This document shows, one piece after another, positions 5,750-30,296 of a stretch of DNA of 30,415 nt; position 1 is the first letter of the stretch; the number at the start of each line of letters is the position of its first letter. The DNA comes from Octopus sinensis. Lineage: Eukaryota. A program made the translations under genes and the position numbers. The notes beneath the pieces were generated by a model. It was not told the origin of the DNA. It saw nothing but the letters and a program-made list of their open reading frames with translations, and ran no database searches. The stretch lies in NCBI RefSeq assembly GCF_006345805.1, contig NW_021832908.1:1-30415 (forward strand). Direction: 5' to 3'.

Positions 5750-7125
5750 CTTGGAAATGGATGCGTGGTGTTCAATCATATAATAAATTACTTCCCACTC
5801 TTAAGCAGCCAATATACAGTTGTCCATGCGACGGGTCTTCCAAGAGAAGACCCGTCACAGAGAGGGTTTGACCATGAGATTTGTTAATGAACATGGCAAA
5901 ACTGACACGAAGTGGGAATTGCAGTCTTCTGAACGTAAATGGGATTTCTGCTCCTGATGTTAAATGGCGGAGTGTCGTCGGTGAAGTGAAAAGCCAACGA
6001 CGCGCCAGAAAGCCTCATTGCTACTTATGTACTGTCCCACCTGACAGTGCATCACCTCATCCTGGCAGTATTCTTGTTGCAGTCCAAACATTGCAGCGTC
6101 AGAACCCTTGTTCACATACTTACAAACGTACTTTATGGACGTAACGGAGTTGCAAAACTCAACGTTGATGTGGGCATGGAAAGTCTTTGACAAGATTGGG
6201 CAGTAGGGAACAATCCATCTATTATCAACCTCGTGCTGTCCGATAGTTGCTGTGAAACTACCATCTTCTGGTTTTCTCCGTCTGTATGATGGGTAACCAT
6301 CAGCACTCGTTTGAGTTTCTTGTAGGAACTTCCTTGGAAACCTTTTCGAACATACGCTGTCTTTCAAGCATGGTGAGTTTATGTTGAATCCATGCCCACA
6401 TGGACCATGCACCATGTTTGCCTTGACTATTTCGTATAGTACGTTGTGTAAAACTGGATTAGGAAGCTCTGCAGAGATTATATTGTCGATGTCAGTGGAT
6501 TTGATCTTCGTTGACAGCCAAAGTAGGATATGAGCATGTGGAAGGCCCCTTTTTTGCCATTCGATTGTGTACATGTCACACTGTATGGGTCCGAAGACTT
6601 GCCCTTTTTTATGAGCTCCATGAGAGTGACTAACTTCAGATGGAAAACTCGAGCGAGGAGGTCGTGCCTGTCTTTAGGCTTTTGACCGAAGAAGAGTTCG
6701 GCCTGAATCTCCTCCCATTTGGGATTGCATGTGAAAGTAAAGAACAGGTCAGGACTGCCGTAATGGCGGACAAAGGTCGTTGCATTCTGTGTTCTTGCAT
6801 GCATGTATCGGGGACTTCCAGTGAAGGTGAAGAGCAAGATGCAAACTCTTCCTATGCTTGTTGGAGCAGCATCATTGTTGCTGACATCTCGGAAATGGAT
6901 GTAGCAGTCAGAGCGCAATTTTTTTTTTTTTATGTGACCAAATGAAACGTTTTTCTCTCTGATTCCATTTTTGCGCACATGTCGACTGCAAATTGATGAA
7001 ACAGCTCTTGAGATTGGTGGAGGTGATTACAGCAGTTGTTTTGGGTCATAAATCGGTATGAGTAGAAGTCCATGCAGGATACTGGCTTGTTGAGATGTTC
7101 ATTACGATTTTAGTGCGATACTCAT
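5750..7125 (-). pseudogene. Helitron RepHel remnant: Rep (HUH) domain joined to the C-terminal motifs of the Pif1-like helicase
   Basis: Translated pieces: VSCMDFYSYRF..LFHQFAVDMCAKMESER, KKLRSDCYIHFRD, GSPRYM, PDLFFTFTCNPKW (motif 1), EWQKRGLPHAHILLW (HUH), KYVCKYVNKG, YISSNEAFWR. Another frame then gives IPFTFRRLQFPLRVSFAMFINKSHGQTL..SHGQLYIGCLRV (helicase V/VI). Frameshifts near 6930, 6605 and 5965. Confidence 0.92.
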
Positions 7126-9004: not shown

Positions 9005-10716
9005 AAACTTAGATAAACTTAGATATGTTTCGACCAAAGATTGGTCCAGGCCATGTCTAACTTAATAGCACCACCTGATAGGATTATTCGAATCCTGTTT
9101 AAGTCAAGTTTTGTTCAAGTAGTGAGTTCTTGTTGGGTGAGTTGTATCCAGTTTTGTTCAAGTAGTGAGTTCTTGTTGGGTGAGTTGTATCCAATTATGG
9201 GTGGCTTATCTGGTATTCTTTGAAGGAATCTATCCAGACTCTGTTTAAAGTTGATGGGATCCTTTTCCTCGTTGATCTCCCTCGGGACAATGTTAAATAG
9301 GGCAGGGCCTGTTGAGGAAAAGAAATTATGTTGCAGTGTACATGTATGTTGTGATCTTGAATTGGGCAGGGGACGTATAGCCCGTGGTCCAAGTCTTGTA
9401 TGAACCTTGAAGCTAATGTTTAGGTCGTTTGGGCAAAGATGGCGGTATATTTTCCACATCGTACAAAATGATGTACCGCTCACGGCGACGCTGGAGGAGT
9501 AAAGTTTCAAGGCTTTAAGGCGATCCCAATAATCGAGAGCAGCCATGCCTTCAATTTGTTTAGTGAGAGCCCTCTGGGGTGACTCAATTCTGGAGATGTT
9601 TTGTCTTGTGTGAGGAGACCACAGTGGGCAGCAGTATTCAAGGTGTGGTCGTACAAAGGAGGAAAAAAGTGGTATGATGACACCTTGTTCTCTGGACCGG
9701 AAAGTCTTAAGATCCAGGAACTCATCCTACGAGCTATATCGACCTTCTTGTTGATGTGTGCACTCCAACTGAGATCGTCATCAACAATTACACCCAAGTC
9801 TCTGATATTGTTAGAGGCTGTGAGCGGTTCCCCTGAAGAAGAAGAGAGTATGGTTGTTTTAGTGAGGAATTTCTTCCAAATGCATCAGCTCAAATTTTCC
9901 CTCATTCAGTTGCATTTGTTTTCTGTCTGCCCATTGACTCACAGCATATAGATCAGACTGGAGTTGAGTTCGGTCTGCTTCTTCATGACGATTTGCTGGA
10001 GCTTAGTGTCATCAGCGAATATTTTCACTTTGCAGTAATGTACGACACTGGAAAGGTCGTTTACGTAAATTATGAAGAGTAGCGGACCCAAAACAGTTCC
10101 CTGGGGAACACCGCTGGTGACTTTTGCTGGGTTTGAGGGACTCCATCAACTACAACATGTTGTGTTCTATTCGCCAGGAAATACTAATCAGTGTAGAACT
10201 TTTCCACGGATTCCAACATTTGCCAATTTTGAGAGAGAGTAGGATGTTATGGTCTACCCTGTCGAACGCTTTACTGAAGTCAAGATATATGACGTCAGAG
10301 TTCGAACCTGTTCCCAAGGCTTGAGTACATCTTCAATGTGGTGGTAAGAGCTGTGTTAGACAGTCCCTGCCACAGCGAAAGCCATGCTGATTTGAATTTA
10401 GGAGTTTGTGGGTCTCCAGGAAGTCAGCTATCCTTGATCTTAACACTCTTTCAAACACTTTAATGATGTGGGAGGTGAGAGTGAGATTGGGCGATAGTTG
10501 ACTGCGAGGGATTGTTTCCCTGTTTGAAAACCGGGATGACCGACTGGGATAGAAACTGTTTCGGTATATAACCTGCGTCTAACGAATTTCTCCAGGGGTT
10601 GGTCAGAGGGACTGCAAGTTGATATCTACATTCCTTCAGGAGACTGGCGGGAAATCTATCAGGGCCTACAGCAGAGTAATGTTTGACCTCATTTATTGCT
10701 GCTACGATGTCGGTGG
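9005..10716 (-). mobile_element. 5'-truncated CR1/L2-type LINE (RT and C-terminal region), frameshifted
   Basis: Translated pieces: [95 protein letters not shown]. 3' end has a 10-bp tandem (AAACTTAGAT x2, 9005-9024). A 43-bp tandem duplication lies at 9107-9193. Confidence 0.92.
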
Positions 10717-12735: not shown

Positions 12736-13750
12736 TTGGGTCATCCCATAAATAATGCGGTTTTTTTTTAATACTTCATTTCATTTTTAAAATTAAAATA
12801 AGGAGTGGCTATGTGGTAAGTAGCTTGCTAACCAGCCACATGGTTCCGGGTTCAGTCCCACTGCGTGGCATCTTGGGCAAGTGTCTTCTGCTATAGCCCC
12901 GGGCCGACCAATACCTTGTGAGTGGATTTGGTGGACGGAAACTGAAAGAAGCCCGTCGTATATATATGTGTGTGTGTGTGTGTGTTTGTGTGTCTGTGTT
13001 TGTCCCCCCAGCATTGCTTAACAACCGATGCTGGTGTGTGTACGTCCCCGTCACTTTGCGGTTCGGCAAAAGAGACCGATAGAATAAGTACTGGTCTTAC
13101 AAAGAATAAGCCGATTTTCTCGACTAAAGGCGGTGCTCCAGCAAGGCCGCAGTCAAATGACTGAAACAAGTAAAAGAGTAACGTTCTTTTATCTAAAAAA
13201 AAAATCTTTCATTTTCTACAATGCTTTTCCAACTATCTGCTATCAAGGTTTCTCTTCCAGCATTCCGTGACGAAAAATACTCCACCAGTACAGTTCTGAC
13301 CTCGTCTACAGAATTCATATTTTTCCCATCCAAATGATTTCGAAAACTGCGGAATAAATTATAATCATATGGGGCAATGTCTGGCGAATATGGTGGGTGG
13401 GGCGTCGTTTCCCATTCAAACTGCTCCAGTCTTTGGAATGTCATCCTTGCTGTATGTGGCCAGGCATTATTCTGATGGAAGAACACCTTTGGTCATTTTT
13501 CTTCTAGCGCTGACTTCAATGACTGGTTGAATGACCAGATCAAAGCTAGTTCCGCAACAGTTACGATGGGGTTTTGTCCCACCAGGGTTGGCAGGACGTT
13601 CTCATCGAGCTCTACAGATCTTCCAGAACGAGGAGCGTCTTCTAAGCTACAGTTTCCGGCTCGGAATTTCTGGAACAACAGATTGGCTTACGCTTATACT
13701 CCGACCCCCCATATACTGCATGAATATTCCTCGCACTCTCCATTGCATTG
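12736..13750 (-). mobile_element. Internally deleted mariner transposon interrupted by a SINE
   Basis: TA + TTGGGTCATCCCATAAATAATGCGG terminal repeat at 12736. Transposase pieces FQKFRAGNCSLEDAPRSGRSVELDE (HTH region), FFHQNNAWPH and HPPYSPDIAPYDYNLFRS. The WVPHEL/first catalytic region is absent between them. The second TIR was not found. Confidence 0.85.
12801..13180 (+). mobile_element. SINE family A copy inserted into the mariner 3' end
   Basis: Collinear with 4741-5135, including the internal TA/TG microsatellite and the AAATGACTGAAACAAGTAAAAGAGTA tail. Confidence 0.9.
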
Positions 13751-13871: not shown

Positions 13872-16800
13872 TCCAGAGAGGGGGATTTGAGAAATGAAGG
13901 GGAGGAAGGGGAGGTAGGAATGTTGAACATTCCAGAGAGGGGGATTTGAGAAATGAGGGGGGAGGGGGAAGTAGGAATGTTGAACATTCCAGAGAGGGGG
14001 ATTTGAGAATGAAGGGGGAGGGGGAGGGGGAAGTAGGAATGTTGAACATTCCAGAGAGGGGGATTTGAGAAATGAAGGGGAGGAAGGGAAGGTAGGAATG
14101 TTGAACATTCCAGAAAGGGGGTTTGAGAAATGAAAGGGAGGAGGAAGGGGAGTTAGGAATGTTGAACATTCCAGAGGGGGATTTGAGAAATGAAAGGGAG
14201 GAAGGGGAGTTAGGAATGTTGAACATTCCAGAGAGGGGGATTTGAGAAATGAAGGGGAGGAAGGGGAGGTAGGAATGTTGAACATTCCAGAGAGGGGGGT
14301 TTGAGAAATGAAGGGGAGGAAGGGGAGGTAGGAATGTTGAACATTCCAGAGAGGGGGATTTGAGAAATGAAAGGGAGGAAGGGAGTTAGGAATGTTGAAC
14401 ATTCCAGAGAGGTGGATTTGAGAAATGAAGGGGAGGAAGGGGAGGTAGGAATGTTGAACATTCCAGAGAGGTGGATTTGAGAATGAAGGGGAGGAAGGGG
14501 AGTATAGGAATGTTGAACATTCCAGAGAGGTGGATTTGAGAAATGAAGGGGGAGGGGGAAGTAGGAATGTTGAACATTCCAGAGAGGGGGATTTGAGAAT
14601 GAAGGGGAGGAGGGAAGGTAGGAATGTTGAACATTCCAGAAAGGGGGTTTGAGGAATGAAAGGGAGAAGGGGAGTTAGGAATGTTGAACATTCCAGAGAG
14701 GGGGATTTGAGAAATGAAAGGGAGGAAGGGGAGTTAGGAATGTTGAACATTCCAGAGAGGTGGATTTGAGAAATGAAGGGGAGGAAGGGGAGGTAGGAAT
14801 GTTGAACATTCCAGAGAGGGGGGTTTGAGAAATGAAGGGGAGGAAGGGGAGGTAGGAATGTTGAACATTCCAGAGAGGGGGATTTGAGAAATGAAAGGGA
14901 GGAAGGGGAGTTAGGAATGTTGAACATTCCAGAGAGGTGGATTTGAGAAATGAAGGGGAGGAAGGGGAGGTAGGAATGTTGAACATTCCAGAGAGGTGGA
15001 TTTGAGAAATGAAAGGGAGGAAGGGAGGTAGAATGTTGAACATTCCAGAGAGGGGATTTGAGAAATGAAAGGGAGGAAGGGGAGTTAGGAATGTTGAACA
15101 TTCCAGAGGGGGGGATTGGAGAAATGAATGGGAGGAAGGGGAGGTAGGAATGTGTGAACATTCCAGAGAGGGGGATTTGAAAATGAAGGGGAGGAGGGGA
15201 GGTAGGAATGTTGAACATTCCAGAGAGGGAGATTTGAGAAATGAGGGGAGGAAGGGAAGTTAGGAATGTTGAACATTCCAGAAAGGGGGTTTGAGAAATG
15301 AAAGGGAGGAAGGGGAGTTAGGAATGTTGAACATTCCAGAGAGGGGATTTGAGAAATGAAAGGGAGGAAGGGGAGGTAGGAATGTTGAACATTCCAGAGA
15401 GGTGGATTTGAGAAATGAAGGGGAGGAAGGGAGGTAGGAATGTTGAACATTCCAGAGAGGTGGATTTGAGAAATGATGGTGAGGAGAGGTGGAATGTTGA
15501 ACATCCAGAGAGGGGGATTTGAGAAATGAAAGGGAGGAAGGGGAGTTAGGAATGTTGAACATTCCAGAGAGGTGGATTTGAGAAAAGAAGGGAGGAAGGG
15601 GAGGTAGGAATGTTGAACATTCCAGAGAGGGTTTGAGAAATGAAAGGGGGAAGGGGAGTTAGGAATGTTGAACATTCCAGAGAGGTGGATTTCAGAAATG
15701 AAGGGGAGGAAGGGGAGGAAGGAATTTTGAACATTCCAGAGAGGGGGATTGAAAAGAAGGGGAGAAAGGGGATGTAGGAATGTTGAACATTCCAGAGAGG
15801 GGATTTGAGAAATGAAAGGGAGGAAGGGAGTTAGGAATGTTGAACATTCCAGAGAGGTGGATTTGAGAAATGAAGGGGAGGAAGGGAGGTAGAATGTTGA
15901 ACATTCCAGAGAGGGGGATTTGAGAAATGAGGGGAGGAAGGGGGGGAGGTAGTAATGTTGAACATTCCAGAGAGGGGGATTTGAGAAATGAGGGGAGGAA
16001 GGGAAGGTAGGAATGTTGAACATTCCAGAAAGAGGGGTTTGAGAAATGAAAGGGAGGAAGGGGAGTTAGGAATGTTGAACATCCAGAGAGGGGGATTTGA
16101 GAATGAAGAGGAGGAAGGGGAGGTAGGAATGTTGAACATTCCAGAGAGGGGGATTTGAGAAATGAAAGGGAGGAAGGGGAGTTAGGAATGTTGAACATTC
16201 CAGAGAGGTGGATTTGAGAAATGAAGGGGAGGAAGGGGAGGTAGGAATGTTGAACATTCCAGAGAGGGGGATTTGAGAAATGAAGAGGAGGAAGGGGAGG
16301 TAGGAATGTTGAACATTCCAGAGAGGGGGATTTGAGAAATGAAAGGGAGGAAGGGGAGTTAGGAATGTTGAACATTCCAGAGAGGTGGATTTGAGAAATG
16401 AAGGGGAGGAAGGGGAGGTAGGAATGTTGAACATTCCAGAGAGGGGGATTTGAGAAATGAAGGGGAGTAAGGGGAGGTAGGAATGTTGAACATTCCAGAG
16501 AGGGGGATTTGAGAAATGAAAGGGAGGAAGGGGAGTTAGGAATGTTGAACATTCCAGAGAGGTGGATTTGAGAAATGAAGGGGAGGAAGGGGAGGTAGGA
16601 ATGTTGAAAATTCCAGAGAGGGGGATTTGAGAAAAGAAGGGGCTAAAGGGAGGTAGGAATGAACATTCCAGAGAGGGGGTTTGAGAAATGAAAGGAGGAA
16701 GGGGAGTTAGGAATGTTGAACATTCCAGAGAGGGGATTTGAGAATGAAGGGGAGGAAGGGGAGGTAGGAATTTTGAACATTCCAGAGAGGGGATTTGAGA

Positions 16801-19800
16801 ATGAAAGGGAGGAAGGGGAGTTAGAATGTTTACATTCCAGAGAGGTGGATTTGAGAAATGAAGGGGAGGAAGGGGAGTAGGAATGTTGAACACTCCAGAG
16901 AGGGGGATTTGAGAAATGAAAGGAGGAAGGGGAGTTAGGAATGTTGAACATTCCAGAGAGGTGGATTTGAGAAATGAAGGGGAGGAAGGGAGGTAGGAAT
17001 GTTGAACATTCCAGAGAGGGGGATTTGAGAAATGAAGGGGAGGAGGGGAGGTAGGAATGTTGAACATTCCAGAGAGGGGATTTGAGAAATGAAGGGGAGG
17101 AAGGGGAGGTAGGAATGTTGAACATTCCAGAGAGGGGGATTTGAGAAATGAAGGGGAGGAAGGGGAGTTGGAATGTTGAACATTCCAGAGAGGGGGATTG
17201 AGAAATGAAGGGGAGGAAGGGAGGTAGGAATGTTGAACATTCCAGAGAGGGGATTTGAGAAATGAAAGGGAGGAAGGGGAGTTAGGAATGTTGAACATTC
17301 CAGAGAGGATTTGAGAAATGAAGGGGAGGAAGGGGAGGTAGGAATGTTGAACATTCCAGAGAGGGGGATTTGAGAAATGAAGGGGAGTAAGGGGAGGTAG
17401 GAATGTTGAACATTCCAGAGAGGGGATTTCAGAAATGAAAGGAGGAAGGGGAGTTAGGAATGTTGAACATTCCAGAGAGGTGGATTTGAGAAATGAAGGG
17501 GAGGAAGGGAGGTAGGAATGTTGAACATTCCAGAGAGGTGGATTTGAGAAATGAAGGGGAGAAGGGGAGGTAGGAATGTTGAACATTCCAGAGAGGGGGA
17601 TTTGAGAAATGAAGGGAGGAAGGGGAGTTAGGAATGTTGAACATTCCAGAGAGTGGGGATTTGAGAAATGAAGGGGAGGAAGGGGAGGTAGGAATGTTGA
17701 ACATTCCAGAGAGGGGGATTTGAGAAATGAAGGGGAGAAGGGGAGGTAGGAATGTTGAACATTCCAGAGAGGGGAATTGAGAAATGAGGGGAGGAAGGGA
17801 GGTAGGAATGTTGAACATTCCAGAAAGGGGTTTGAGAAATGAAAGGGAGGAAGGGGAGTTAGGAATGTTGAACATTCCAGAGAGGTGGATTGAGAAATGA
17901 AGGGGAGGAAGGAGAGGTAGGAATGTTGAACATTCCAGAGAGGGGGATTTGAGAAATGAAGGAGAGGAAGGGGAGGTAGGATGTTGCACATTCCAGAGAG
18001 GGGGATTTGAGAATTGAAAGGGAGGAAGGGGAGTTAGGAATGTTGAACATTCCAGAGAGGTGGATTTGAGAAATGAAGGGGGAGGAAGGGGAGGTAGGAA
18101 TGTTGAACATTCCAGAGAGGGGGATTTGAGAATGAAAGGGAGGAAGGGGAGTTAGGAATGTTGAACATTCCAGAGAGGTGGATTTGAGAAATGAAGGGGA
18201 GGAGGGGAGGTAGGAATGTTGAACATTCCAGAGAGGGGGATTTGAGAAATGAAAGGGAGGAAGGGGTGTTAGGAATGTTGAACATTCCAGAGAGGTGGAT
18301 TTGAGAAATGAAGGGGAGGAAGGGGAGGTAGGAATGTTGAACATTCCAGAGAGGGGGATTTGAGAAATTAAGGGGAGGAAGGGGAGGTAGGAATGTTGAA
18401 CATTCCAGAGAGGGGGATTTGAGAAATGAAAGTGAGGAAGGGGAGTTAGGAGTGTTGAACATTCCAGAGAGGGGTATTTGAGAAATGAAGGGAGGAAGAA
18501 GTTGGATGTTGAACATTCCAGAGAGGTGGATTTGAGAAATGAAGGGGAGGAAGGGGAGGTAGGAATGTTGAACATTCCAGAGAGGTGGATTTGAGAAATG
18601 AAGGGGAGGAAGGGGAGGTAGGAATGTTGAACATTCCAGAGAGGGGGATTTGAGAAATGAAAGGGAGGAAGGGGAGTTAGGAATGTTGAACATTCCAGAG
18701 AGGGGGATTTGAGAAATGAAGGGGAGGAAGGGGAGGAAGGAATGTTGAACATTCCAGAGAGGGGGATTTGAGAAAAGAAGGGGAGGAAGGGGATGTAGGA
18801 ATGTTAAACATTCCAGAGAGGGGGATTTGAGAAATGAACGGGAGGAAGGGGAGTTAGGAATGTTGAACATTCCAGAGAGGTGGATTTGAGAAATGAAGGG
18901 GAGGAAGGGGAGGTAGGAATGTTGAACATTCCAGAGAGGGGGATTTGAGAAATGAAGGGGAGGAAGGGGAGGTAGGAATGTTGAACATTCCAGAGAGGGG
19001 ATTTGAGAAATGAAGGGGAGGAAGGGGAGGTAGGAATGTTGAACATTCCAGAGAGGGGGATTTGAGAAATGAAAGGGAGGAAGGGGAGTTAGGAATGTTG
19101 AACATTCCAGAGAGGGGGATTTGAGAAATGAAGGGGAGGAAGGGGAGGTAGGAATGTTGAACATTCCAGAGAGGGGGATTTGAGAAATGAAAGGGAGGAA
19201 GGGGAGTTAGGAATGTTGAACATTCCAGAGAGGTGGATTTGAGAAATGAAGGGGAGGAAGGGGAGGTAGGAATGTTGAACATTCCAGAGAGGGGGATTTG
19301 AGAAATGAAGGGGAGTAGGAAGGGGAGTAGGAATGTTGAACATTCCAGAGAGGGGGATTTGAGAAATGAAAGGGAGGGGGAGTTAGGATGTTGAACATTC
19401 CAGAGAGGTGGATTTGAGAAATGAAGGGGAGGAAGGGGAGGTAGGAATGTTGAACATTCCAGAGAGGTGGATTTGAGAAATGAAGGGGAGGAAGGGGAGG
19501 TAGGAATGTTGAACATTCCAGAGAGGGGGATTTGAGAAATGAAAGGGAGGAAGGGGAGTTAGGAATGTTGAACATTCCAGAGAGGTGGATTTGAGAAATG
19601 AAGGGGAGGAAGGGGAGGTAGGAATGTTGAACATTCCAGAGAGGGGGATTTGAGAAATGAAGGGGAGGAAGGGGAGGTAGGAATGTTGAACATTCCAGAG
19701 AGGGGGAATTGAGAAATGAGGGGAGGAAGGGAAGGTAGGAATGTTGAACATTCCAGAAAGGGGGGTTTGAGAAATGAAAGGGAGGAAGGGGAGTTAGGAA

Positions 19801-22800
19801 TGTTGAACATTCCAGAGAGGTGGATTTGAGAAATGAAGGGGAGGAAGGAGAGGTAGGAATGTTGAACATTCCAGAGAGGGGGATTTGAGAAATGAAGGAG
19901 AGGAAGGGGAGTTAGGAATGTTGAACATTCCAGAGAGGGGGATTTGAGAAATGAAAGGGAGGAAGGGGAGTTAGGAATGTTGAACATTCCAGAGAGGTGG
20001 ATTTGAGAAATGAAGGGGAGGAAGGGGAGGTAGGAATGTTGAACATTCCAGAGAGGGGGATTTGAGAAATGAAAGGGAGGAAGGGGAGTTAGGAATGTTG
20101 AACATTCCAGAGGAGGGGATTTGAGAAATGAAGGGAGAAGGGGAGGAGGTAGGAATGTTGAACATTCCAGAGAGGGGGATTTGAGAAATGAAAGGGAGGA
20201 AGGGGAGTTAGGAATGTTGAACATTCCAGAGAGGTGGATTTGAGAAATGAAGGGGAGGAAGGGGAGGTAGGAATGTTGAACATTCCAGAGAGGGGGATTT
20301 GAGAAATGAAAGGGAGGAAGGGGTGTTAGGAATGTTGAACATTCCAGAGAGGTGGATTTGAGAAATGAAGGGGAGGAAGGCGAGGTAGGAATGTTGAACA
20401 TTCCAGAGAGGGGGATTTGAGAAATGAAGGGGAGTAAGGGGAGGTAGGAATGTTGAACATTCCAGAGAGGGGGATTTGAGAAATGAAGGGGAGGAAGGGG
20501 AGGTAGGAATGTTGAACATTCCAGAGAGGTGGATTTGAGAAATGAAGGGGACGAAGGGGAGGTAGGAATGTTGAACATTCCAGAGAGGGGGATTTGAGAA
20601 ATGAAAGGGAGGAAGGGGAGTTAGGAATGTTGAACATTCCAGAGAGGTGGATTTGAGAAATGAAGTGGAGGAAGGGGAGGTAGGAATGTTGAACATTCCA
20701 GAGGGGGGATTTGAGAAATGAAAGGGAGGAGGGGAGTTAGGAATGTTGAACATTCCAGAGAGGGGATTTGAGAAATGAAGGGGAGGAAGGGGAGTTAGGA
20801 ATGTTGAACATTCCAGAGAAGGGGATTTGAGAAATGAAAAGGAGGAAGGGGGGAGGTTAGGAGTGTTGAACATTCCAGAGAGGGGGATTTGAGAAATGAA
20901 GGGGAGGAAAGGGAGGTAGGAATATTGAACATTCCAGAGACGGGGATTTGAGAAATGAAGGGGAGGAAGGGGAGGTAGGAATGTTGAACATTCCAGAGAG
21001 GTGGATTTGAGAAATGAAGGGGATGAAGGGGAGGTAGGAATGTTGAACATTCCAGAGAGGGGGATTTGGGAAATGAAGGGGAGGAAGGGGAGGTAGGAAT
21101 GTTGAACATTCCAGAGAGGGGGATTTGAGAAATGAAAAGGAGGAATGGGAGTTAGGAATGTTGAACATTCCAGAGAGTTGGATTTGAGAAATGAAGGGGA
21201 GGAAGGGGAGGTAGGAATGTTGAACATTCCAGAGAGGGGGATTTGAGAAATGAAGGGGAGGAAGGGGAGGTAGGAATGTTGAACATTCCAGAGAGGGGGA
21301 TTGAGAAATGAAGGGGAGGAACGGGAGTTAGGAATGTTGAACATTCCAGAGAGGTGGATTTGAGAAATGAAGGGGAGGAAGGGGAGGTAGGAATGTTGAA
21401 CATTCCAGAGAGGTGGATTTGAGAAATGAAGGGGAGGAAGGGGAGGTAGGAATGTTGAACATTCCAGAGAGGGGGATTTGAGAAATGAAGGGAGAAGGGG
21501 AGTTAGGAATGTTGAACATTCCAGAGAGGGGGATTTGAGAAATGGTGGGGAGGAAGTGGAGGTAGGAATGTTGAACATTCAGAGAGGGGGATTTGAGAAA
21601 TGAAAGGGGGGAAGGGGAGGTAGGAATGTTGAACATTCCAGAGAGGGGGATTTGAGAAATGAGGGGAGGAAGGGAAGGTAGGAATGTTGAACATTCAGCA
21701 GAAAGGGGGGTTTGAGAAATGAAAGGGAGGAAGGGGAGTTAGGAATGTTGAACATTCCAGAGAGGGGGATTTGAGAAATGAAAGGAAGGAAGGGGAGTGA
21801 GGAGTAGGAATGTTGAACATTCCAGAGAGGTGGATTTGAGAAATGAAGGGGAGGAAGGAAGGGGAGGTAGGAATGTTGAACATTCCAGAGAGGTGGATTT
21901 GAGAAATGAAGGGGGACGAAGGGGAGGTAGGAATGTTGAACATTCCAGAGAGGGGGATTTGAGAAATGAAAGGGAGGAAGGGGAGTTAGCAATGTTGAAC
22001 ATTCCAGAGAGGTGGATTTGAGAAATGAAGTGGAGGAAGGGGAGGTAGGAATGTTGAACATTCCAGAGAGGGGGATTTGAGAAATGAAAGGGAGGAAGGG
22101 GAGTTAGGAATGTTGAACATTCCAGAGAGGTGGATTTGAGAAATGAAGGGGAGGAAGGGGAGGTAGGAATGTTGAACATTCCAGAGAAGGGGATTTGAGA
22201 AATGAAAGGGAGGAAGGGGAGTTAGGAGTGTTGAACATTCCAGAGAGGGGGATTTGAGAAATGAAGGGGAGGAAAGGGAGGTAGGAATATTGAACATTCC
22301 AGAGACGGGGATTTGAGAAATGAAGGGGAGGAAGGGGAGGTAGGAATGTTGAACATTCCAGAGAGGTGGATTTGAGAAATGAAGGGGAGGTAGGAATGTT
22401 GAACATTCCAGAGAGGGGGATTTGAGAAATGAAGGGGAGGAAGGGGAGGTAGGAATGTTGAACATTCCAGAGAGGGGGATTTGAGAAATGAAAGGGAGGA
22501 AGGGGAGTTAGGAATGTTGAACATTCCAGAGAGGTGGATTTGAGAAATGAAGGGGAGGAAGGGGAGGAGGAGGTTGAACATTCCAGAGAGGGGGATTTGA
22601 GAAATGAAAGGGAGGAAGGGGTGTAGTAGAATGTTGAACATTCCAGAGAGGTGGATTTGAGAAATGAAGGGGAGGAAGGGGAGGTAGGAATGTTGAACAT
22701 TCCAGAAAGGGGGGTTGAGAATTTGAGAAATGAAGGGGAGGAAGGGGAGGTTAGGAATGTTGAACATTCCAGAGAGGGGGATTTGAGAAATGAAGGGGAG

Positions 22801-24212
22801 GAAGGAAGGGGAGTTTGGAATGTTAAACATTCCAGAGAGGTGGATTTGAGAATGAAGGGGAGGAAGGGGAGGTAGGAATGTTGAACATTCCAGAGAGGGG
22901 GATTTGAGAAATGAAAGGTAGGAAGGGGAGTTAGGAATGTTGAACATTCCAGAGAGGTGGATTTGAGAAATGAAGGGGAGGAAGGGGAGTTAGGAATGTT
23001 GAACATTCCAGAGAGGGGGATTTGAGAAATGAAAGGGAGGAAGGGGAGTTAGGAATGTTGAACATTCCAGAGAGGTGGATTTGAAAATGAAGGGGAGGAA
23101 GGGGAAGGTAGGAATGTTGAACATTCCAGAGAGGGGGATTGAGAAATGAAAGGGAGGAAGGGGAGTTAGGAGTGTTGAACATTCCAGAGAGGGGGATTTG
23201 AGAAATGAAGGGGAGGAAGGGGAAGTTGGAGGTAGGAATGTTGAACATTCCAGAGAGGGGGATTTGAGAAATGAAGGGGAGGAAGGGGAGGTAGGAATGT
23301 TGAACATTCCAGAGAGAGGGGGATTGAGAAATGAAGGGGAGGTAGGAATGTTGAACATTCCAGAGAGGGGGATTGAGAAATGAAGGGAGGAAGGGAGGGG
23401 AGGTAGGAAGTTGAACATTCCAGAGAGGGGGATTTGAGAAATGAAAGGGAGGATGGGGAGTAGGAATGTTGAACATTCCAGAGAGGTGGATTTGAGAAAT
23501 GAAGGGGGGAAGGGGTGGTAGGAATGTTGAACATTCCTGAGAGGGGGATTTGAGAATGAAAGGGGAGGAAGGGGAGGAGGGAATGTTGAACATTCCAGAG
23601 AGGTGGATTTGAGAAATGAAGGGGAGGAAGGGGAGGTAGGAATGTGAACATTCCAGAGAGGTGATTTGAGAAATGAAGGGGAGGAAGGGGAGTTAGGAAT
23701 GTGAACATTCCAGAGAGGTGGATTTGAGAAATGAAGGGGAGGAAGGGGAGGTAGGAATGTTGAACATTCCAGAGAGGTGGATTTGAGAAATGAAAGGGGA
23801 GGAAGGGGAGGTAGGGTTGAAACATTCCAGAGAGGGGATTGAGAAATGAAAGGGGAGGAAGGGGAGTTAGGAGTGTTGAACATCCAGAGAGGGGGATTTG
23901 AGAAATGAAGGGGAGGAAGGGGAGGTAGGAATGTTGAACTTCCAGAGAGGGGGATTTGAGAAATGAAGTGGAGGTAGGAATGTTGAACATTCCAGAGAGG
24001 GGTTGAGAAACGAAAGGGGAGGAAGGGGAGGTAGGAATGTTGAACATTCCATAGAGGGGGATTTGAGAAGTAAAGGGGAGGGTGGGGAGGTAGGAATGTT
24101 GAACGTTCGAGAGAGGAGGATTTGAGAAGTGAAGGGGAGGAAGGGGAGGTAGGAATGTTGAACATTCCAGAGAGGGGGATTTTAGAAATGAAGGGGAGGA
24201 AGGGGAGGAATG
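13872..24212. repeat. Satellite array, ~175 copies of a 59-bp unit (CCAGAGAGGGGGATTTGAGAAATGAAGGGGAGGAAGGGGAGGTAGGAATGTTGAACATT)
   Basis: Direct periodicity over ~10.3 kb. The consensus has 46/59 purines on the + strand. Each junction-spanning unit contains GGAATGTT-G-AACATTCC. Confidence 0.98.
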
Positions 24213-27680: not shown

Positions 27681-28103
27681 AGTGTATAATGCTCACTGAT
27701 TTATACATAGTCATGCTTTGTAATCCTACCATTAATGCTATTTGTATTCCTAAGATGTTACAAGTATTTTTATCTACTGATAACACTATCAACGATTCTA
27801 TTCTAATGTTATATCTTCAAAGTGTTTTAGAAAATTTTTTGTATATTGTTATCTATTACAGTTTGTGTTCGTGCCTTAGCAACCTTATATTTGTTACTGT
27901 TATGTTTTGTAGCTGTTGTTGTTGTTTATAAATGGATGAATTAAACAGCGATAGAGTTACAACTGCAAGGATGAATTAACATTAAATATCAGTCTATCAA
28001 CGAACCTTTTTCGTTATATTTTGGCGGCTCAAAAATATGTGAACATTCTGAAGTATAATCTGAACGTGACGCATCTTTTTCTCCACCAGCTTGTAAGTAT
28101 AAA

Positions 28104-28217
28104 TTCACAGTGCGACCGATCTTTTCGAGCAAGAATTGGTCTTATCAGTCACTTGCGGACTCACCAATAAATTTGCGCGAAGACCATCATCCTCGACCTT
28201 GAGGGATTGCCATAGAA
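28104..28217 (+). mobile_element. Extreme 3' end of an RTE (BovB-like) LINE with 11-bp TSD
   Basis: 28105-28170 encodes SQCDRSFRARIGLISHLRTHQ*, the RTE C-terminal C2H2-like motif. GTAAGTATAAA is repeated at 28093-28103 and 28218-28228. Confidence 0.85.
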
Positions 28218-28380
28218 GTAAGTATAAAGTAAATCTATTTTAACCTCTTAAAGTATAAATCTGACAGAAATGTTGCTTTTGATTTTTGACCGGTAATTTT
28301 TCTTTACTTTGTGTTACTTTTCGGTTAATTAATCTGATCAGTTTTGAAAGTGACGCCTACTTTCTTTAAGAGTGACATTC

Positions 28381-29353
28381 TCTAGGAACTGGGTTGATGC
28401 CCTGCCTGTGGCCAATACTGGCAGTCAGGAACTGGGTTGATGCCCTGCCTGTGGCCAATACTGGCAGTCAGGAACTGGGTTGATGCCCTGCCTGTGGCCA
28501 ATACTGGCAGTCAGGAACTGGGTTGATGCCCTGCTTGTGGCCAATACTGGCAGTCTAGGAACTGGGTTGATGCCCTGCCTGTGGCCAATACTGGCAGTCA
28601 GGAACTGGGTTGATGCCCTGCCTGTGGCCAATACTGGCAGTCTAGGAACTGGTTTGATGCCCTGCTTGTGGCCAATACTGGCAGTCTAGGAACTGGGTTG
28701 ATGCCCTGCCTGTGGCCAATACTGGCAGTCTAGGAACTGGGTTGATGCCCTGCTGTGGCCAATACTGGCAGTCAGGAACTGGGTTGATGCCCTGCCTGTG
28801 GCAATACTGGCAGTCTAGGAACTGGGTTGATGCCCTGCCTGTGGCCAATACTGGCAGTCAGGAACTGGGTTGATGCCTGCCTGTGGCCAATACTGGCAGT
28901 CTAGGAACTGGGTTGATGCCCTGCCTGTGGCCAATACTGGCAGTCTAGGAACTGGGTTGATGCCCTGCCTGTGGCCAATACTGGCAGTCTAGGAACTGGG
29001 TTGATGCCCTGCCTGTGGCCAATACTGGCAGTCTAGGAACTGGGTTGATGCCCTGCCTGTGGCCAATACTGGCAGTCTAGGAACTGGGTTGATGCCCTGC
29101 CTGTGGCCAATACTGGCAGTCAGGAACTGGGTTGATGCCCTGCCTGTGGCCAATACTGGCAGTCAGGAACTGGCAGTCTAGGAACTGGGTTGATGCCCTG
29201 CCTGTGGCCAATACTGGCAGTCAGGAACTGGGTTGATGCCCTGCTTGTGGCCAATACTGGCAGTCTAGGAACTGGGTTGATGCTCTGCCTGTGGCCAATA
29301 CTGGCAGTCAGGAACTGGGTTGATGCCCTGCCTGTGGCCAATACTGGCAGTCA
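28381..29353. repeat. Minisatellite, 22 full 43/44-bp units plus one 15-bp truncated unit
   Basis: Unit AGGAACTGGGTTGATGCCCTGCCTGTGGCCAATACTGGCAGTC(T), counted from starts at 28384 to 29310. Short unit at 29165-29179. Confidence 0.97.
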
Positions 29354-29930
29354 GCTTAATCTGGATGATTGCATTCAGAGTGGAAGCCGACGTCTGTGGG
29401 GGATTGAGATGTCACTGTGATAGGCCTTCATGGTTTGTCTTGTCGCCTAAATGCCGGTCATTTCGTTCGTCACATCAAGCTAAACCTGACCATTAAAGGG
29501 GCCATAGCTCAGGCTAATATTTCCTCAGTTCTGGAGCCGGCGGAATTATCCAGAAGTGATGGGAAGAGACCAGGTGGTCTTACGCTTTGTCCCATGCGTA
29601 AGAGATAGGTGCCTCCTCTGGGGGCATCACAGTTGGTGACTCCTTTGTTCCCTTCAACATCCTGGATGCTGCTGTAAAAGGGAGGATCACTGCTTCGGTA
29701 GCCGAACGGAACAAAATCCTAAAGTATCGGGACTTGGTGGAACCATTTCTTCCAGCCTTTGGCGTTTGAGATGTTTGGAGCTGGACCGCTGACAACGAAG
29801 TTCTTGTCATCGTTAGTGGCTCTCGCCTTACCGAGACGTCGGGTGATGCTCGTGAAGACACTTGGCATTTCCAACGCTGTAACCTCGCCCATCACCCACG
29901 TGATGCCGTGATCGTGTTGGCTTGCTTCAC
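29354..29930 (+). pseudogene. CRE-clade non-LTR retrotransposon C-terminal remnant (zinc-knuckle and restriction-like endonuclease)
   Basis: Translated pieces: LNLDD, GLHGLSCR..AGHFVRH..LN, LEPAELSRSDGKRPGGLTLCP, ITVGDS, AERNKILKYRDL, FQPLAFEMFG, ETSGDARE..FQRCNLA. This follows the CRE-type RH..LN / DGKRPDG / K..KY / F.P.A.ET.G / QR.S.A pattern, with several frameshifts. Confidence 0.8.
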
Positions 29931-30009
29931 CAAGTCCCGTTAACCCTTATTGTGCGCGACCAATTGATGCATTAAGTGCTAAATTGATGTTTTCTTTCTT
30001 TCTTCGCTC

Positions 30010-30296
30010 ATGATTATGGCGATCTTTCGTCTCTAGTAGACCTTTCCGTCGATTTACACAACATACTGTCTGTCTCCCACACCCCATCAAACACACACAT
30101 ACACACACACATGTACATCAATGCGTCCCATGCACGGTAACTTCAAAAGAACTTCCCTCGTCATACAATCGCTTTCTCTTAGTCTCTTTCGCTCTCATTA
30201 CTTCAAAAGTTCCCGCAAGCCCATATGTAAAAAAAAAAATTTTTTTACGGAAATCGACGGAAAGGTCTACTAGAGACGAAAGATTGCCATGATTAT
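30010..30296. other. 46-bp inverted repeat pair (3 transition mismatches) around 195 bp; possible MITE or piggyBac-like internal repeats
   Basis: 30010-30055 versus 30251-30296. The 40-bp core ATGGCGATCTTTCGTCTCTAGTAGACCTTTCCGTCGATTT has 1 mismatch. TTAA-CCCTT at 29940-29948 resembles a piggyBac end. Confidence 0.8.

What the first reader, a model, noticed from the sequence alone, without database searches (positions are those of the whole stretch)
28381..29930. Minisatellite apparently born from the coding sequence of a CRE-clade retrotransposon
Seen: the 43-bp unit translates as (S)RNWVDALPVANTG. Directly after the last unit plus 6 nt of partial unit, the sequence continues as LNLDD and then the CRE zinc-knuckle/RLE remnant. 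Known, from memory of CRE alignments: this region reads roughly [19 protein letters not shown], so one unit + LNLDD reconstructs the native motif. Inference: the 5'-most 43 bp of a truncated LINE was amplified 22-fold, either by repeated template jumps during reverse transcription or by later slippage. The 15-bp short unit at 29165 joins AACTGG to (T)ACTGG, a visible microhomology deletion. This is a rarely caught birth of a tandem repeat from RT coding DNA.
Basis: partly seen in the sequence, partly recalled or inferred. Interest (0 to 1): 0.75.

Follow-up and report, generated by a model that had tools for sequence, protein, structure and literature searches.

The report
Minisatellite grown inside dead CRE retrotransposon
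A 43/44-base piece of protein-coding sequence inside a dead, truncated CRE-type jumping gene has been copied head-to-tail 22 times; the origin is unusually easy to read, but minisatellites that arise this way are common.

Summary
Window 28381-29354 is a tandem array of 22 full units (43 or 44 nt) plus one 15-nt unit. Unit cores are about 99% identical.

One unit translates as SRNWVDALPVANTG. Read into the downstream LNLDD, it matches a conserved linker motif that is present in relatives of the element and is never duplicated in any of them.

The surrounding sequence (about 28324-29940) is a decayed, 5'-truncated copy of a non-LTR retrotransposon with a restriction-like endonuclease (RLE). Its relatives group with Repbase Cre-1_BM (LINE/CRE-II) and the classical CRE elements, with 200/200 bootstrap support. 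So the CRE call is supported.

One correction: the amplified piece is not the 5'-most 43 bp. At least 48-57 nt of collinear, in-frame element sequence lie upstream of the array, so the array is internal.

The founder segment was bracketed by an imperfect direct repeat, TCTAG...TCAG. The 22 internal junctions are exactly those two forms (12 and 10). This favours slipped mispairing or unequal exchange after insertion over template jumping.

About 23% of human mini/satellites derive from transposable elements, so this is a tidy new example of a known kind. I could not test whether the unit forms arrays at other loci of the source genome.

The parts
28324..28380 (+). 5' end of the truncated CRE-II copy. 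It is linker coding sequence collinear and in frame with the first repeat unit (VN*SDQF*K*RLLSLRVTF) and carries three in-frame stops. No element homology lies further upstream.
   Evidence: tblastn with P0003 residues 11-44 gives one HSP at 28324-28425, 41% identity. hmmsearch starts at profile position 173 of 416. A 16-column family PSSM ranks this exact position 1 of 60,736 six-frame positions.
28381..29354 (+). The minisatellite: 22 full units of 43/44 nt plus one 15-nt unit. Each unit encodes SRNWVDALPVANTG in one frame. Junctions are TCAG (10) or TCTAG (12).
   Evidence: TRF, unit table, pattern scan with shuffles.
29166..29180 (+). Short unit GGAACTGGCAGTCTA, produced by deletion between the two ACTGG direct repeats of one unit.
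   Evidence: Unit table, read directly from the sequence.
29311..29369 (+). Last unit, continuing without a break into native downstream coding sequence (NWVDALPVANTGSQLNLDD). This is the single-copy state seen in relatives.
   Evidence: It aligns to Cre-1_BM 'SSYWLQAYPSSNTGTLLDNN'.
29368..29424 (+). Helix before the knuckle and first half of the CCHC knuckle (IAFRVEADVCGGLRCHCDR). It is frameshifted relative to LNLDD, a few codons are lost before it, and roughly 19 nt are deleted after it compared with the Octopus vulgaris copy.
   Evidence: tblastn with P0001, 74% identity over 19 aa; hmmsearch; sequence comparison with L001.
29420..29599 (+). Second half of the knuckle and the N-terminal half of the RLE (GLHGLSC...RH..LN...EP...DGKRPGG).
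   Evidence: hmmsearch 81 bits, E=2.9e-26; tblastn with P0003, 62% identity over 58 aa.
29620..29940 (+). C-terminal half of the RLE domain, with further frameshifts (a stretch at 29741-29815 reads in another frame) and stops. The stop codon is at about 29938-29940.
   Evidence: hmmsearch; tblastn.

Best explanation
A CRE-clade non-LTR retrotransposon (Repbase 'CRE-II', Cre-1_BM-like) with a restriction-like endonuclease inserted here as a 5'-truncated copy. The copy kept only the end of the linker, the CCHC knuckle and the nuclease (about 28324-29940), and then decayed.

Within this dead copy, a 43/44-nt stretch of linker coding sequence was duplicated in place and expanded to 22 copies. The stretch encodes the conserved S-x-x-W-L-x-A-L-P-x4-G motif, 36 residues upstream of the knuckle's C.CG motif in relatives.

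The founder stretch was bracketed by an imperfect direct repeat: ...ATTC TCTAG GAACTGG...ACTGGCAG TCAG CTTAAT... Slipped-strand mispairing or unequal sister-chromatid exchange between TCTAG and TCAG gives a first duplication whose junction is either TCTAG (44-nt unit) or TCAG (43-nt unit). Later out-of-register exchange expanded the array and mixed the two junction types. A secondary deletion between two ACTGG repeats made the 15-nt unit.

The unit length is not a multiple of three and the flanks are full of stops, so the array encodes nothing. It is most likely neutral DNA.

Shown: the array, its homology to a motif that is not duplicated in any relative, collinear element sequence on both flanks, and CRE and RLE membership of the family. 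Inferred: that the amplification came after insertion, and that it arose by slippage or unequal exchange.
For: - Array and unit table.
- Unit equals native coding sequence. The alignment of relatives places RNWVDALPVANTG on 'SGxWLxAxPxxxxG'. It also matches Cre-1_BM 'SSYWLQAYPSSNTG' directly (E=3.5e-5 for the stitched remnant).
- Not duplicated elsewhere. The motif occurs once in 136 of the 154 relatives; the one apparent double was a chance regex match. The spacing from the motif to the knuckle (C.CG) is 36 residues in 127 of the 128 relatives where both could be located; the one outlier is the same chance match. The closest relative, an Octopus vulgaris copy (L001), has the sequence once and no tandem repeat.
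- Internal position. Collinear, in-frame element sequence lies upstream and downstream.
- Junction logic. The native 5' side reads TCTAG|GAACTGG and the native 3' side reads GGCAG|TCAG|CTT. All 22 internal junctions are one of these two forms.
- Turnover after origin. The CCT>CTT variant sits in non-adjacent units 4, 7 and 21, and the two junction types are fully interspersed.
- Precedent. 23% of human mini/satellites derive from transposable elements and expand by local duplication; short flanking direct repeats are one recognised starting point (PMC3389668).
Against: - The source genome could not be searched, so I cannot show that this is the only locus carrying the array.
- There is only one assembly. 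The copy number, and the three single-C deletions in short C runs, could be sequencing or polishing errors.
- The two junction types differ by a single T. One could have come from the other by a simple indel rather than from two crossover points.
- The upstream match is short (16-19 codons with three stops), though it was a single pre-specified position with p about 1e-5 to 1e-4.
- Nothing in the sequence dates the first duplication relative to insertion.
Confidence: 0.75

Rival explanations
1. The array was made in one step during retrotransposition. The element's reverse transcriptase repeatedly switched back about 43 nt on its RNA template, or jumped between templates, so the copy was born with the tandem repeat.
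For: Reverse transcriptases of RLE-type LINEs are known to jump between templates in vitro (established knowledge for R2). The array lies only about 50 nt from the 5' truncation point, near where cDNA synthesis ended.
Against: - The array is internal. Collinear element sequence resumes in frame upstream of it, so synthesis did not end in the repeat.
- About 22 consecutive identical back-jumps would be needed.
- There are two junction forms, fully interspersed, and a shared variant in non-adjacent units. These are signs of later array turnover.
- End-to-end template jumping joins template ends, not internal sites.
Confidence: 0.07
2. The 43/44-nt repeat is a dispersed satellite family of this genome. 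It is either a pre-existing satellite into which CRE elements insert, or a CRE-derived satellite now present at many loci, and this locus is just one member.
For: The window is very rich in tandem repeats, including a 10-kb array of a 59-bp satellite. Many RLE-type LINEs target repeats (PMC4640811). The source genome could not be searched.
Against: - Element sequence flanks the array on both sides, in register with the unit. This rules out insertion into a pre-existing satellite.
- The unit is absent from the rest of the 30-kb window and from JGI metagenome contigs.
- A search of 5.8 billion predicted proteins with array translations from both strands found nothing.
- None of the 154 relatives carries a duplicated motif.
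Confidence: 0.1
3. The array, or its length, is an assembly artefact: over-expansion or collapse of a short duplication.
For: The single-C deletions in units 9, 10 and 12 look like homopolymer errors of long-read data. Only one assembly was available.
Against: The units carry distinct substitutions, two junction forms and one internally deleted unit, in an irregular order. That is not what a mis-assembled perfect repeat looks like.
Confidence: 0.03

Closest known systems
Minisatellites derived from transposable elements (Ahmed & Liang 2012, PMC3389668; reviewed in PMC6947457; plant examples in PMC7004042 and PMC3648361)
   Same: An internal piece of a transposable element is amplified head-to-tail at the site of one copy. 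The array is flanked by the rest of the element and expanded by local duplication. Short direct repeats at the unit boundaries are a recognised starting point.
   Different: Here the donor is protein-coding linker sequence of a CRE-clade LINE in an invertebrate genome. The imperfect direct repeat TCTAG/TCAG accounts for both junction forms. Polymorphism and spread to other loci were not tested.
Cre-1_BM (Repbase; RepeatMasker class LINE/CRE-II) and the classical CRE elements (CRE1, CRE2, SLACS, CZAR)
   Same: RT-bearing relatives of the window copy match Cre-1_BM at E=1e-83 to 1e-101 from the reverse transcriptase to the knuckle. They group with it, and with all CRE references, at 200/200 bootstraps. 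The linker motif 'SSYWLQAYPSSNTGTLLDNN...CVCG...HGLSC' is shared.
   Different: The window copy has lost its reverse transcriptase, so it is placed only through its C-terminal domain and its closest relative. It does not lie in a spliced-leader or other RNA gene, unlike the trypanosomatid CRE elements.
R2 retrotransposon protein (R2Bm 8GH6; R2Tg 9DOU, 9NL3)
   Same: The same C-terminal architecture: helical linker, CCHC knuckle and PD-(D/E)xK nuclease. The AlphaFold model of relative P0003 (pLDDT 93.7) has R2 proteins as its seven best PDB matches, probability 1.00, TM-score 0.44-0.60 normalised by the query.
   Different: It belongs to a different clade by reverse-transcriptase phylogeny. Only 16-18% sequence identity in the structural alignment.

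Membership tests
RLE-type (R2 supergroup) non-LTR retrotransposon | A reverse transcriptase domain upstream of the C-terminal domain, in one reading frame | tested here: met
   Five longer relatives tested have Pfam RVT_1 (E=1e-13 to 1e-18) N-terminal to the shared domain. The best PDB sequence match is the R2Bm reverse transcriptase. L001 carries the reverse transcriptase collinearly. The window copy itself lacks it because of 5' truncation.
RLE-type (R2 supergroup) non-LTR retrotransposon | A CCHC zinc knuckle between the linker and the nuclease | tested here: met
   The cysteine and histidine columns are invariant or nearly so in 100 relatives. In the window the knuckle is recognisable but broken by a deletion of roughly 19 nt and a frameshift.
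RLE-type (R2 supergroup) non-LTR retrotransposon | A C-terminal nuclease with the PD-(D/E)xK fold | tested here: met
   The model of P0003 matches the C-terminal region of R2 proteins. Weaker matches that follow include restriction enzymes and cap-snatching PD-(D/E)xK nucleases. E-P, R-P-D-G, D-x-T and K are conserved. In the window, RPDG has become RPGG and the following strand is frameshifted.
CRE clade (Repbase CRE group; RepeatMasker LINE/CRE-II) | Reverse-transcriptase phylogeny groups the element with CRE reference elements | tested here: met
   Fourteen references were taken from the published RLE-LINE alignment (PMC5678591 supplement). In blastp, Cre-1_BM is by far the best reference for 7 of 7 relatives. 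In a neighbour-joining tree on 400 columns, family plus Cre-1_BM gets 200/200 bootstraps and family plus all CRE references gets 200/200. L001 matches Cre-1_BM collinearly at E=3e-42. Caveats: few references, a distance method, and the window copy is placed only indirectly.
CRE clade (classical trypanosomatid members) | Site-specific insertion into spliced-leader (mini-exon) genes | tested here: not met
   The window has no Rfam family and no tRNA. The 5' neighbour is the tail of another LINE-like reading frame. This feature defines the classical members, not the clade as Repbase draws it.
Minisatellite derived from a transposable element | Head-to-tail copies of a 10-100 bp unit that is not duplicated in the parent element | tested here: met
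   array; motif present once in relatives, never duplicated.
Minisatellite derived from a transposable element | The array is flanked on both sides by collinear sequence of the same element copy | tested here: met
   Upstream. Downstream.
Minisatellite derived from a transposable element | Copy number varies between individuals (VNTR behaviour) | not testable with these tools
   No reads or other assemblies of the source species were reachable. Window reading frames are not on record in the contig index.

The most novel reading that the evidence does not exclude
The tandem array is a direct in-vivo footprint of the CRE-II reverse transcriptase stuttering on its own template during target-primed reverse transcription, through iterated internal template switching at the TC(T)AG microhomology. 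On this reading the copy was born as a minisatellite rather than growing one later.
Probability: 0.05. Interest if true: 0.55.

Novelty: new member of a known kind. Interest (0 to 1): 0.25.

Why it matters
It is a clean worked example of how a minisatellite starts. The parent sequence is known and is never duplicated in relatives. Both flanks of the parent survive. The imperfect direct repeat at the unit boundaries predicts exactly the two junction forms seen. That makes the locus useful for teaching or for benchmarking repeat annotators, which may call it both 'LINE/CRE' and 'satellite'. It could also serve as a VNTR marker in the source species. It does not change what is known about retrotransposons or about how tandem repeats arise.

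Tried and rejected
- Pfam on the stitched remnant found nothing. The C-terminal domain of this family has no Pfam model.
- I guessed that the unit's 'WVDALP' is the R2 'HINALP/KxRINALP' motif and then rejected the guess. In the published RLE-LINE alignment the unit lines up with the 'S..W' helix further upstream (R2Bm STKWIRE). The HINALP equivalent is the later 'AVGLRLG' helix.
- A hairpin-driven slippage idea got no support. Three units folded as single-stranded DNA give z = -1.46, which is unremarkable.
- Higher-order repeats: TRF's longer periods (87-188 nt) only reflect near-identical units. The A/B junction series has 13 runs against about 11.9 expected (my count), so there is no block structure.
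- hmmsearch with a 22-column sub-profile returned nothing on 10,000-residue frames. I replaced it with an ungapped PSSM scan.
- Searches for other loci all failed: exact unit core in JGI metagenome contigs, 0 hits; four window reading frames in the contig index, none on record; array peptides from both strands against 5.8 billion proteins, none.
- Comparison of the 3' UTR with the Octopus copy showed no significant similarity. The 3' end of the element beyond the stop codon is therefore undefined.
- The source species was not identified. The closest relative found is an Octopus vulgaris copy at only 67% nucleotide and 53% amino-acid identity.

Full report
**1. What is there**

Tandem Repeats Finder reports a single array at 28381-29352, with consensus period 44, 22.0 copies and score 1601.

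Cutting the array at the GGAACTGG anchor gives 23 entries: 22 full units and one 15-nt unit at 29166-29180. The units come in two forms that differ by one T at the junction:
- ...ACTGGCAGTCA|GGAACTGG (43 nt, 10 junctions)
- ...ACTGGCAGTCTA|GGAACTGG (44 nt, 12 junctions)

Three units are one base shorter through single-C deletions.

The 40-nt core occurs 19 times with 3 or fewer mismatches, against 0 in 100 shuffles, and nowhere else in the window. Across 22 cores there are only 5 substitutions and 3 one-base deletions.

The short unit reads GGAACTGG|CAGTCTA.

**2. The unit is coding sequence of a retrotransposon**

In one frame the unit reads SRNWVDALPVANTG. The last unit continues without a break into SQLNLDD (29313-29369) and then into a frameshifted remnant.

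A protein search with one unit plus the stitched remnant found 41 relatives. The best is a 247-residue Octopus vulgaris hypothetical protein, at 53% identity.

In the alignment, the unit falls on a conserved block 'SGxWLxAxPxxxLG' immediately before 'L.LDD'. A profile search then found 1,154 relatives at E below 1e-10.

The consensus of 154 of them reads ...[50 protein letters not shown].HGLSC....

The motif occurs once in 136 of the 154 relatives:
- 135 have it once.
- One apparent double proved to be a chance regex match.
- 18 lack it; most of these are N-terminally short fragments and a few have variant residues.

The spacing to the knuckle (C.CG) is 36 residues in 127 of the 128 relatives where both motifs could be located; the one outlier is the same chance match. 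The Octopus locus (L001) carries the sequence once and has no tandem repeat.

It is not met.

**3. What kind of element it is**

Five longer relatives tested have Pfam RVT_1 upstream of the shared domain. Their best PDB sequence match is the R2Bm reverse transcriptase.

An AlphaFold model of the intact relative P0003, built on a 100-sequence alignment, reached pLDDT 93.7. Its seven best PDB matches are all R2 retrotransposon proteins, with probability 1.00 and E about 5e-6. Weaker matches that follow include restriction enzymes and cap-snatching PD-(D/E)xK nucleases. So 'zinc-knuckle/RLE remnant' is right.

For the clade, I took 14 reference sequences from the published RLE-LINE alignment of Mahbub et al. 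2017 (PMC5678591, supplement S5B).
- Seven RT-bearing relatives all hit Repbase Cre-1_BM (labelled LINE/CRE-II) at E=1e-83 to 1e-101, over about 420-485 aligned residues.
- Cre-1_HM, SLACS, CRE1 and CRE2 generally come next, ahead of most R2 matches and of Utopia/NeSL, R4/Dong and HERO.
- In a neighbour-joining tree on 400 columns, the family plus Cre-1_BM gets 200/200 bootstraps, and the family plus all CRE references also gets 200/200.
- The Octopus copy matches Cre-1_BM collinearly from the reverse transcriptase to the knuckle at E=3e-42.
- The window's own stitched remnant matches the Cre-1_BM linker and knuckle directly at E=3.5e-5.

The CRE call is therefore supported. Two caveats apply: the window copy has no reverse transcriptase left, and the reference set is small.

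Unlike the trypanosomatid CRE elements, this copy is not in a spliced-leader or any other recognisable RNA gene.

**4. The array is internal, not terminal**

Profile searches show that element homology in the window begins at profile position 173 of 416, at about nt 28330. In the Octopus copy, earlier positions are present.

The 16-19 codons directly upstream of the first unit, in the same frame, read VN*SDQF*K*RLLSLRVTF. They align to 'VSTADQFGKARLLAAQTKH' of P0003 in a single HSP that runs on into the first unit (28324-28425).

An ungapped family PSSM ranks this one pre-specified position first of 60,736 six-frame positions with 16 columns, and seventh of 60,706 with 21 columns.

So about 50 nt of native sequence precede the array.

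Downstream, the remnant carries several frameshifts, in-frame stops and a deletion of roughly 19 nt inside the knuckle. The copy is long dead.

**5. How the array most likely arose**

The native boundaries can be read from the two ends of the array:
- 5' side: ...ATTC TCTAG GAACTGG...
- 3' side: ...ACTGGCAG TCAG CTTAAT...

The founder segment was therefore bracketed by an imperfect direct repeat, TCTAG/TCAG, 43-44 nt apart. Every one of the 22 internal junctions is either TCTAG or TCAG.

Misaligned pairing between the two repeat copies, by replication slippage or unequal sister-chromatid exchange, yields exactly these two junctions, depending on where the exchange resolves. This is the classical route for minisatellites flanked by short direct repeats (discussed in PMC3389668).

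Two features point to continued turnover after the first duplication. The junction forms are fully interspersed (13 runs against about 11.9 expected). The CCT>CTT variant is shared by non-adjacent units 4, 7 and 21.

Repeated template jumps by the reverse transcriptase are less likely, for three reasons:
- Synthesis clearly continued in register past the array.
- About 22 identical back-jumps would be needed.
- Known template jumping joins template ends.

I cannot exclude that the very first duplication happened during reverse transcription. I also cannot exclude that one junction form arose from the other by a single-T indel.

**6. What could not be tested**

- Window reading frames are not in the contig index.
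- The unit is absent from JGI metagenome contigs.
- A search of 5.8 billion predicted proteins with array translations from both strands found nothing.

So the second refutation condition, that the unit is an independent satellite at many loci, stays open. The in-register element sequence on both flanks does already exclude the variant 'CRE inserted into a pre-existing satellite'. Copy number rests on a single assembly.

**7. Novelty**

Minisatellites derived from transposable elements are well documented. At least 23% of human minisatellites and satellites derive from transposable elements and expand by local duplication (PMC3389668). Reviews and plant studies describe the same process (PMC6947457, PMC7004042, PMC3648361).

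This locus is a neat new instance, with a coding-sequence donor from a CRE-clade LINE and a readable starting repeat. It is not a new kind of thing. Interest is low to moderate.

Noticed in passing
window 13872-24208: A 10.3-kb array of a 59-bp satellite: 176.7 copies, 90% matches, strongly strand-asymmetric (GC skew about +0.78, G-rich on the + strand). It generates many spurious long reading frames on the minus strand.
   Followed up: no
window 5960-6978 (-): A Helitron Rep remnant. Two overlapping reading frames hit Pfam Helitron_like_N (E=3e-28 and 7.5e-6).
   Followed up: partly
window 28021-28170 (+): The end of another LINE-like reading frame, finishing in a C2H2-type finger (...SQCDRSFRARIGLISHLRTHQ*; Pfam zf-C2H2 E=0.0055, below the curated cut-off). 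It lies about 150 nt upstream of the CRE remnant, so the CRE copy sits next to or inside another retrotransposon's tail.
   Followed up: partly
window 30010-30296: A MITE-like structure about 70 nt downstream of the CRE stop codon: 46-nt terminal inverted repeats, 93% complementary, 195 nt apart. It may interrupt the CRE 3' UTR, but no target-site duplication or family was established.
   Followed up: partly
window ~9115-10490 (-): A remnant of a different non-LTR retrotransposon. The reverse-transcriptase region gives weak tblastn matches to Dong/R2/R8 references at 9963-10485, and there are tail reading frames at 9115-9797 with no Pfam hit.
   Followed up: partly
window 13193-13486 (-): A 97-residue reading frame ending '...NAWPHTARMT...PPYSPDIAPYDYNLF...'. 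From memory it looks like the C-terminus of a mariner/Tc1 transposase. Pfam gave no hit.
   Followed up: partly
L001 8734-10744 (Octopus vulgaris OX597816.1, reversed): A CRE-II-like copy covering the reverse transcriptase, linker and RLE, lying between two BTB-domain genes. Its C-terminal 247 codons are annotated as a 'hypothetical predicted protein', which is probably a transposable-element fragment called as a gene.
   Followed up: partly
homologue list: The CRE-II C-terminal domain has over a thousand close relatives on short metagenome contigs (JGI, ENA, Logan), and one is labelled as a Methylomicrobium MAG protein. These are most likely eukaryotic DNA within metagenomes or bins.
   Followed up: no
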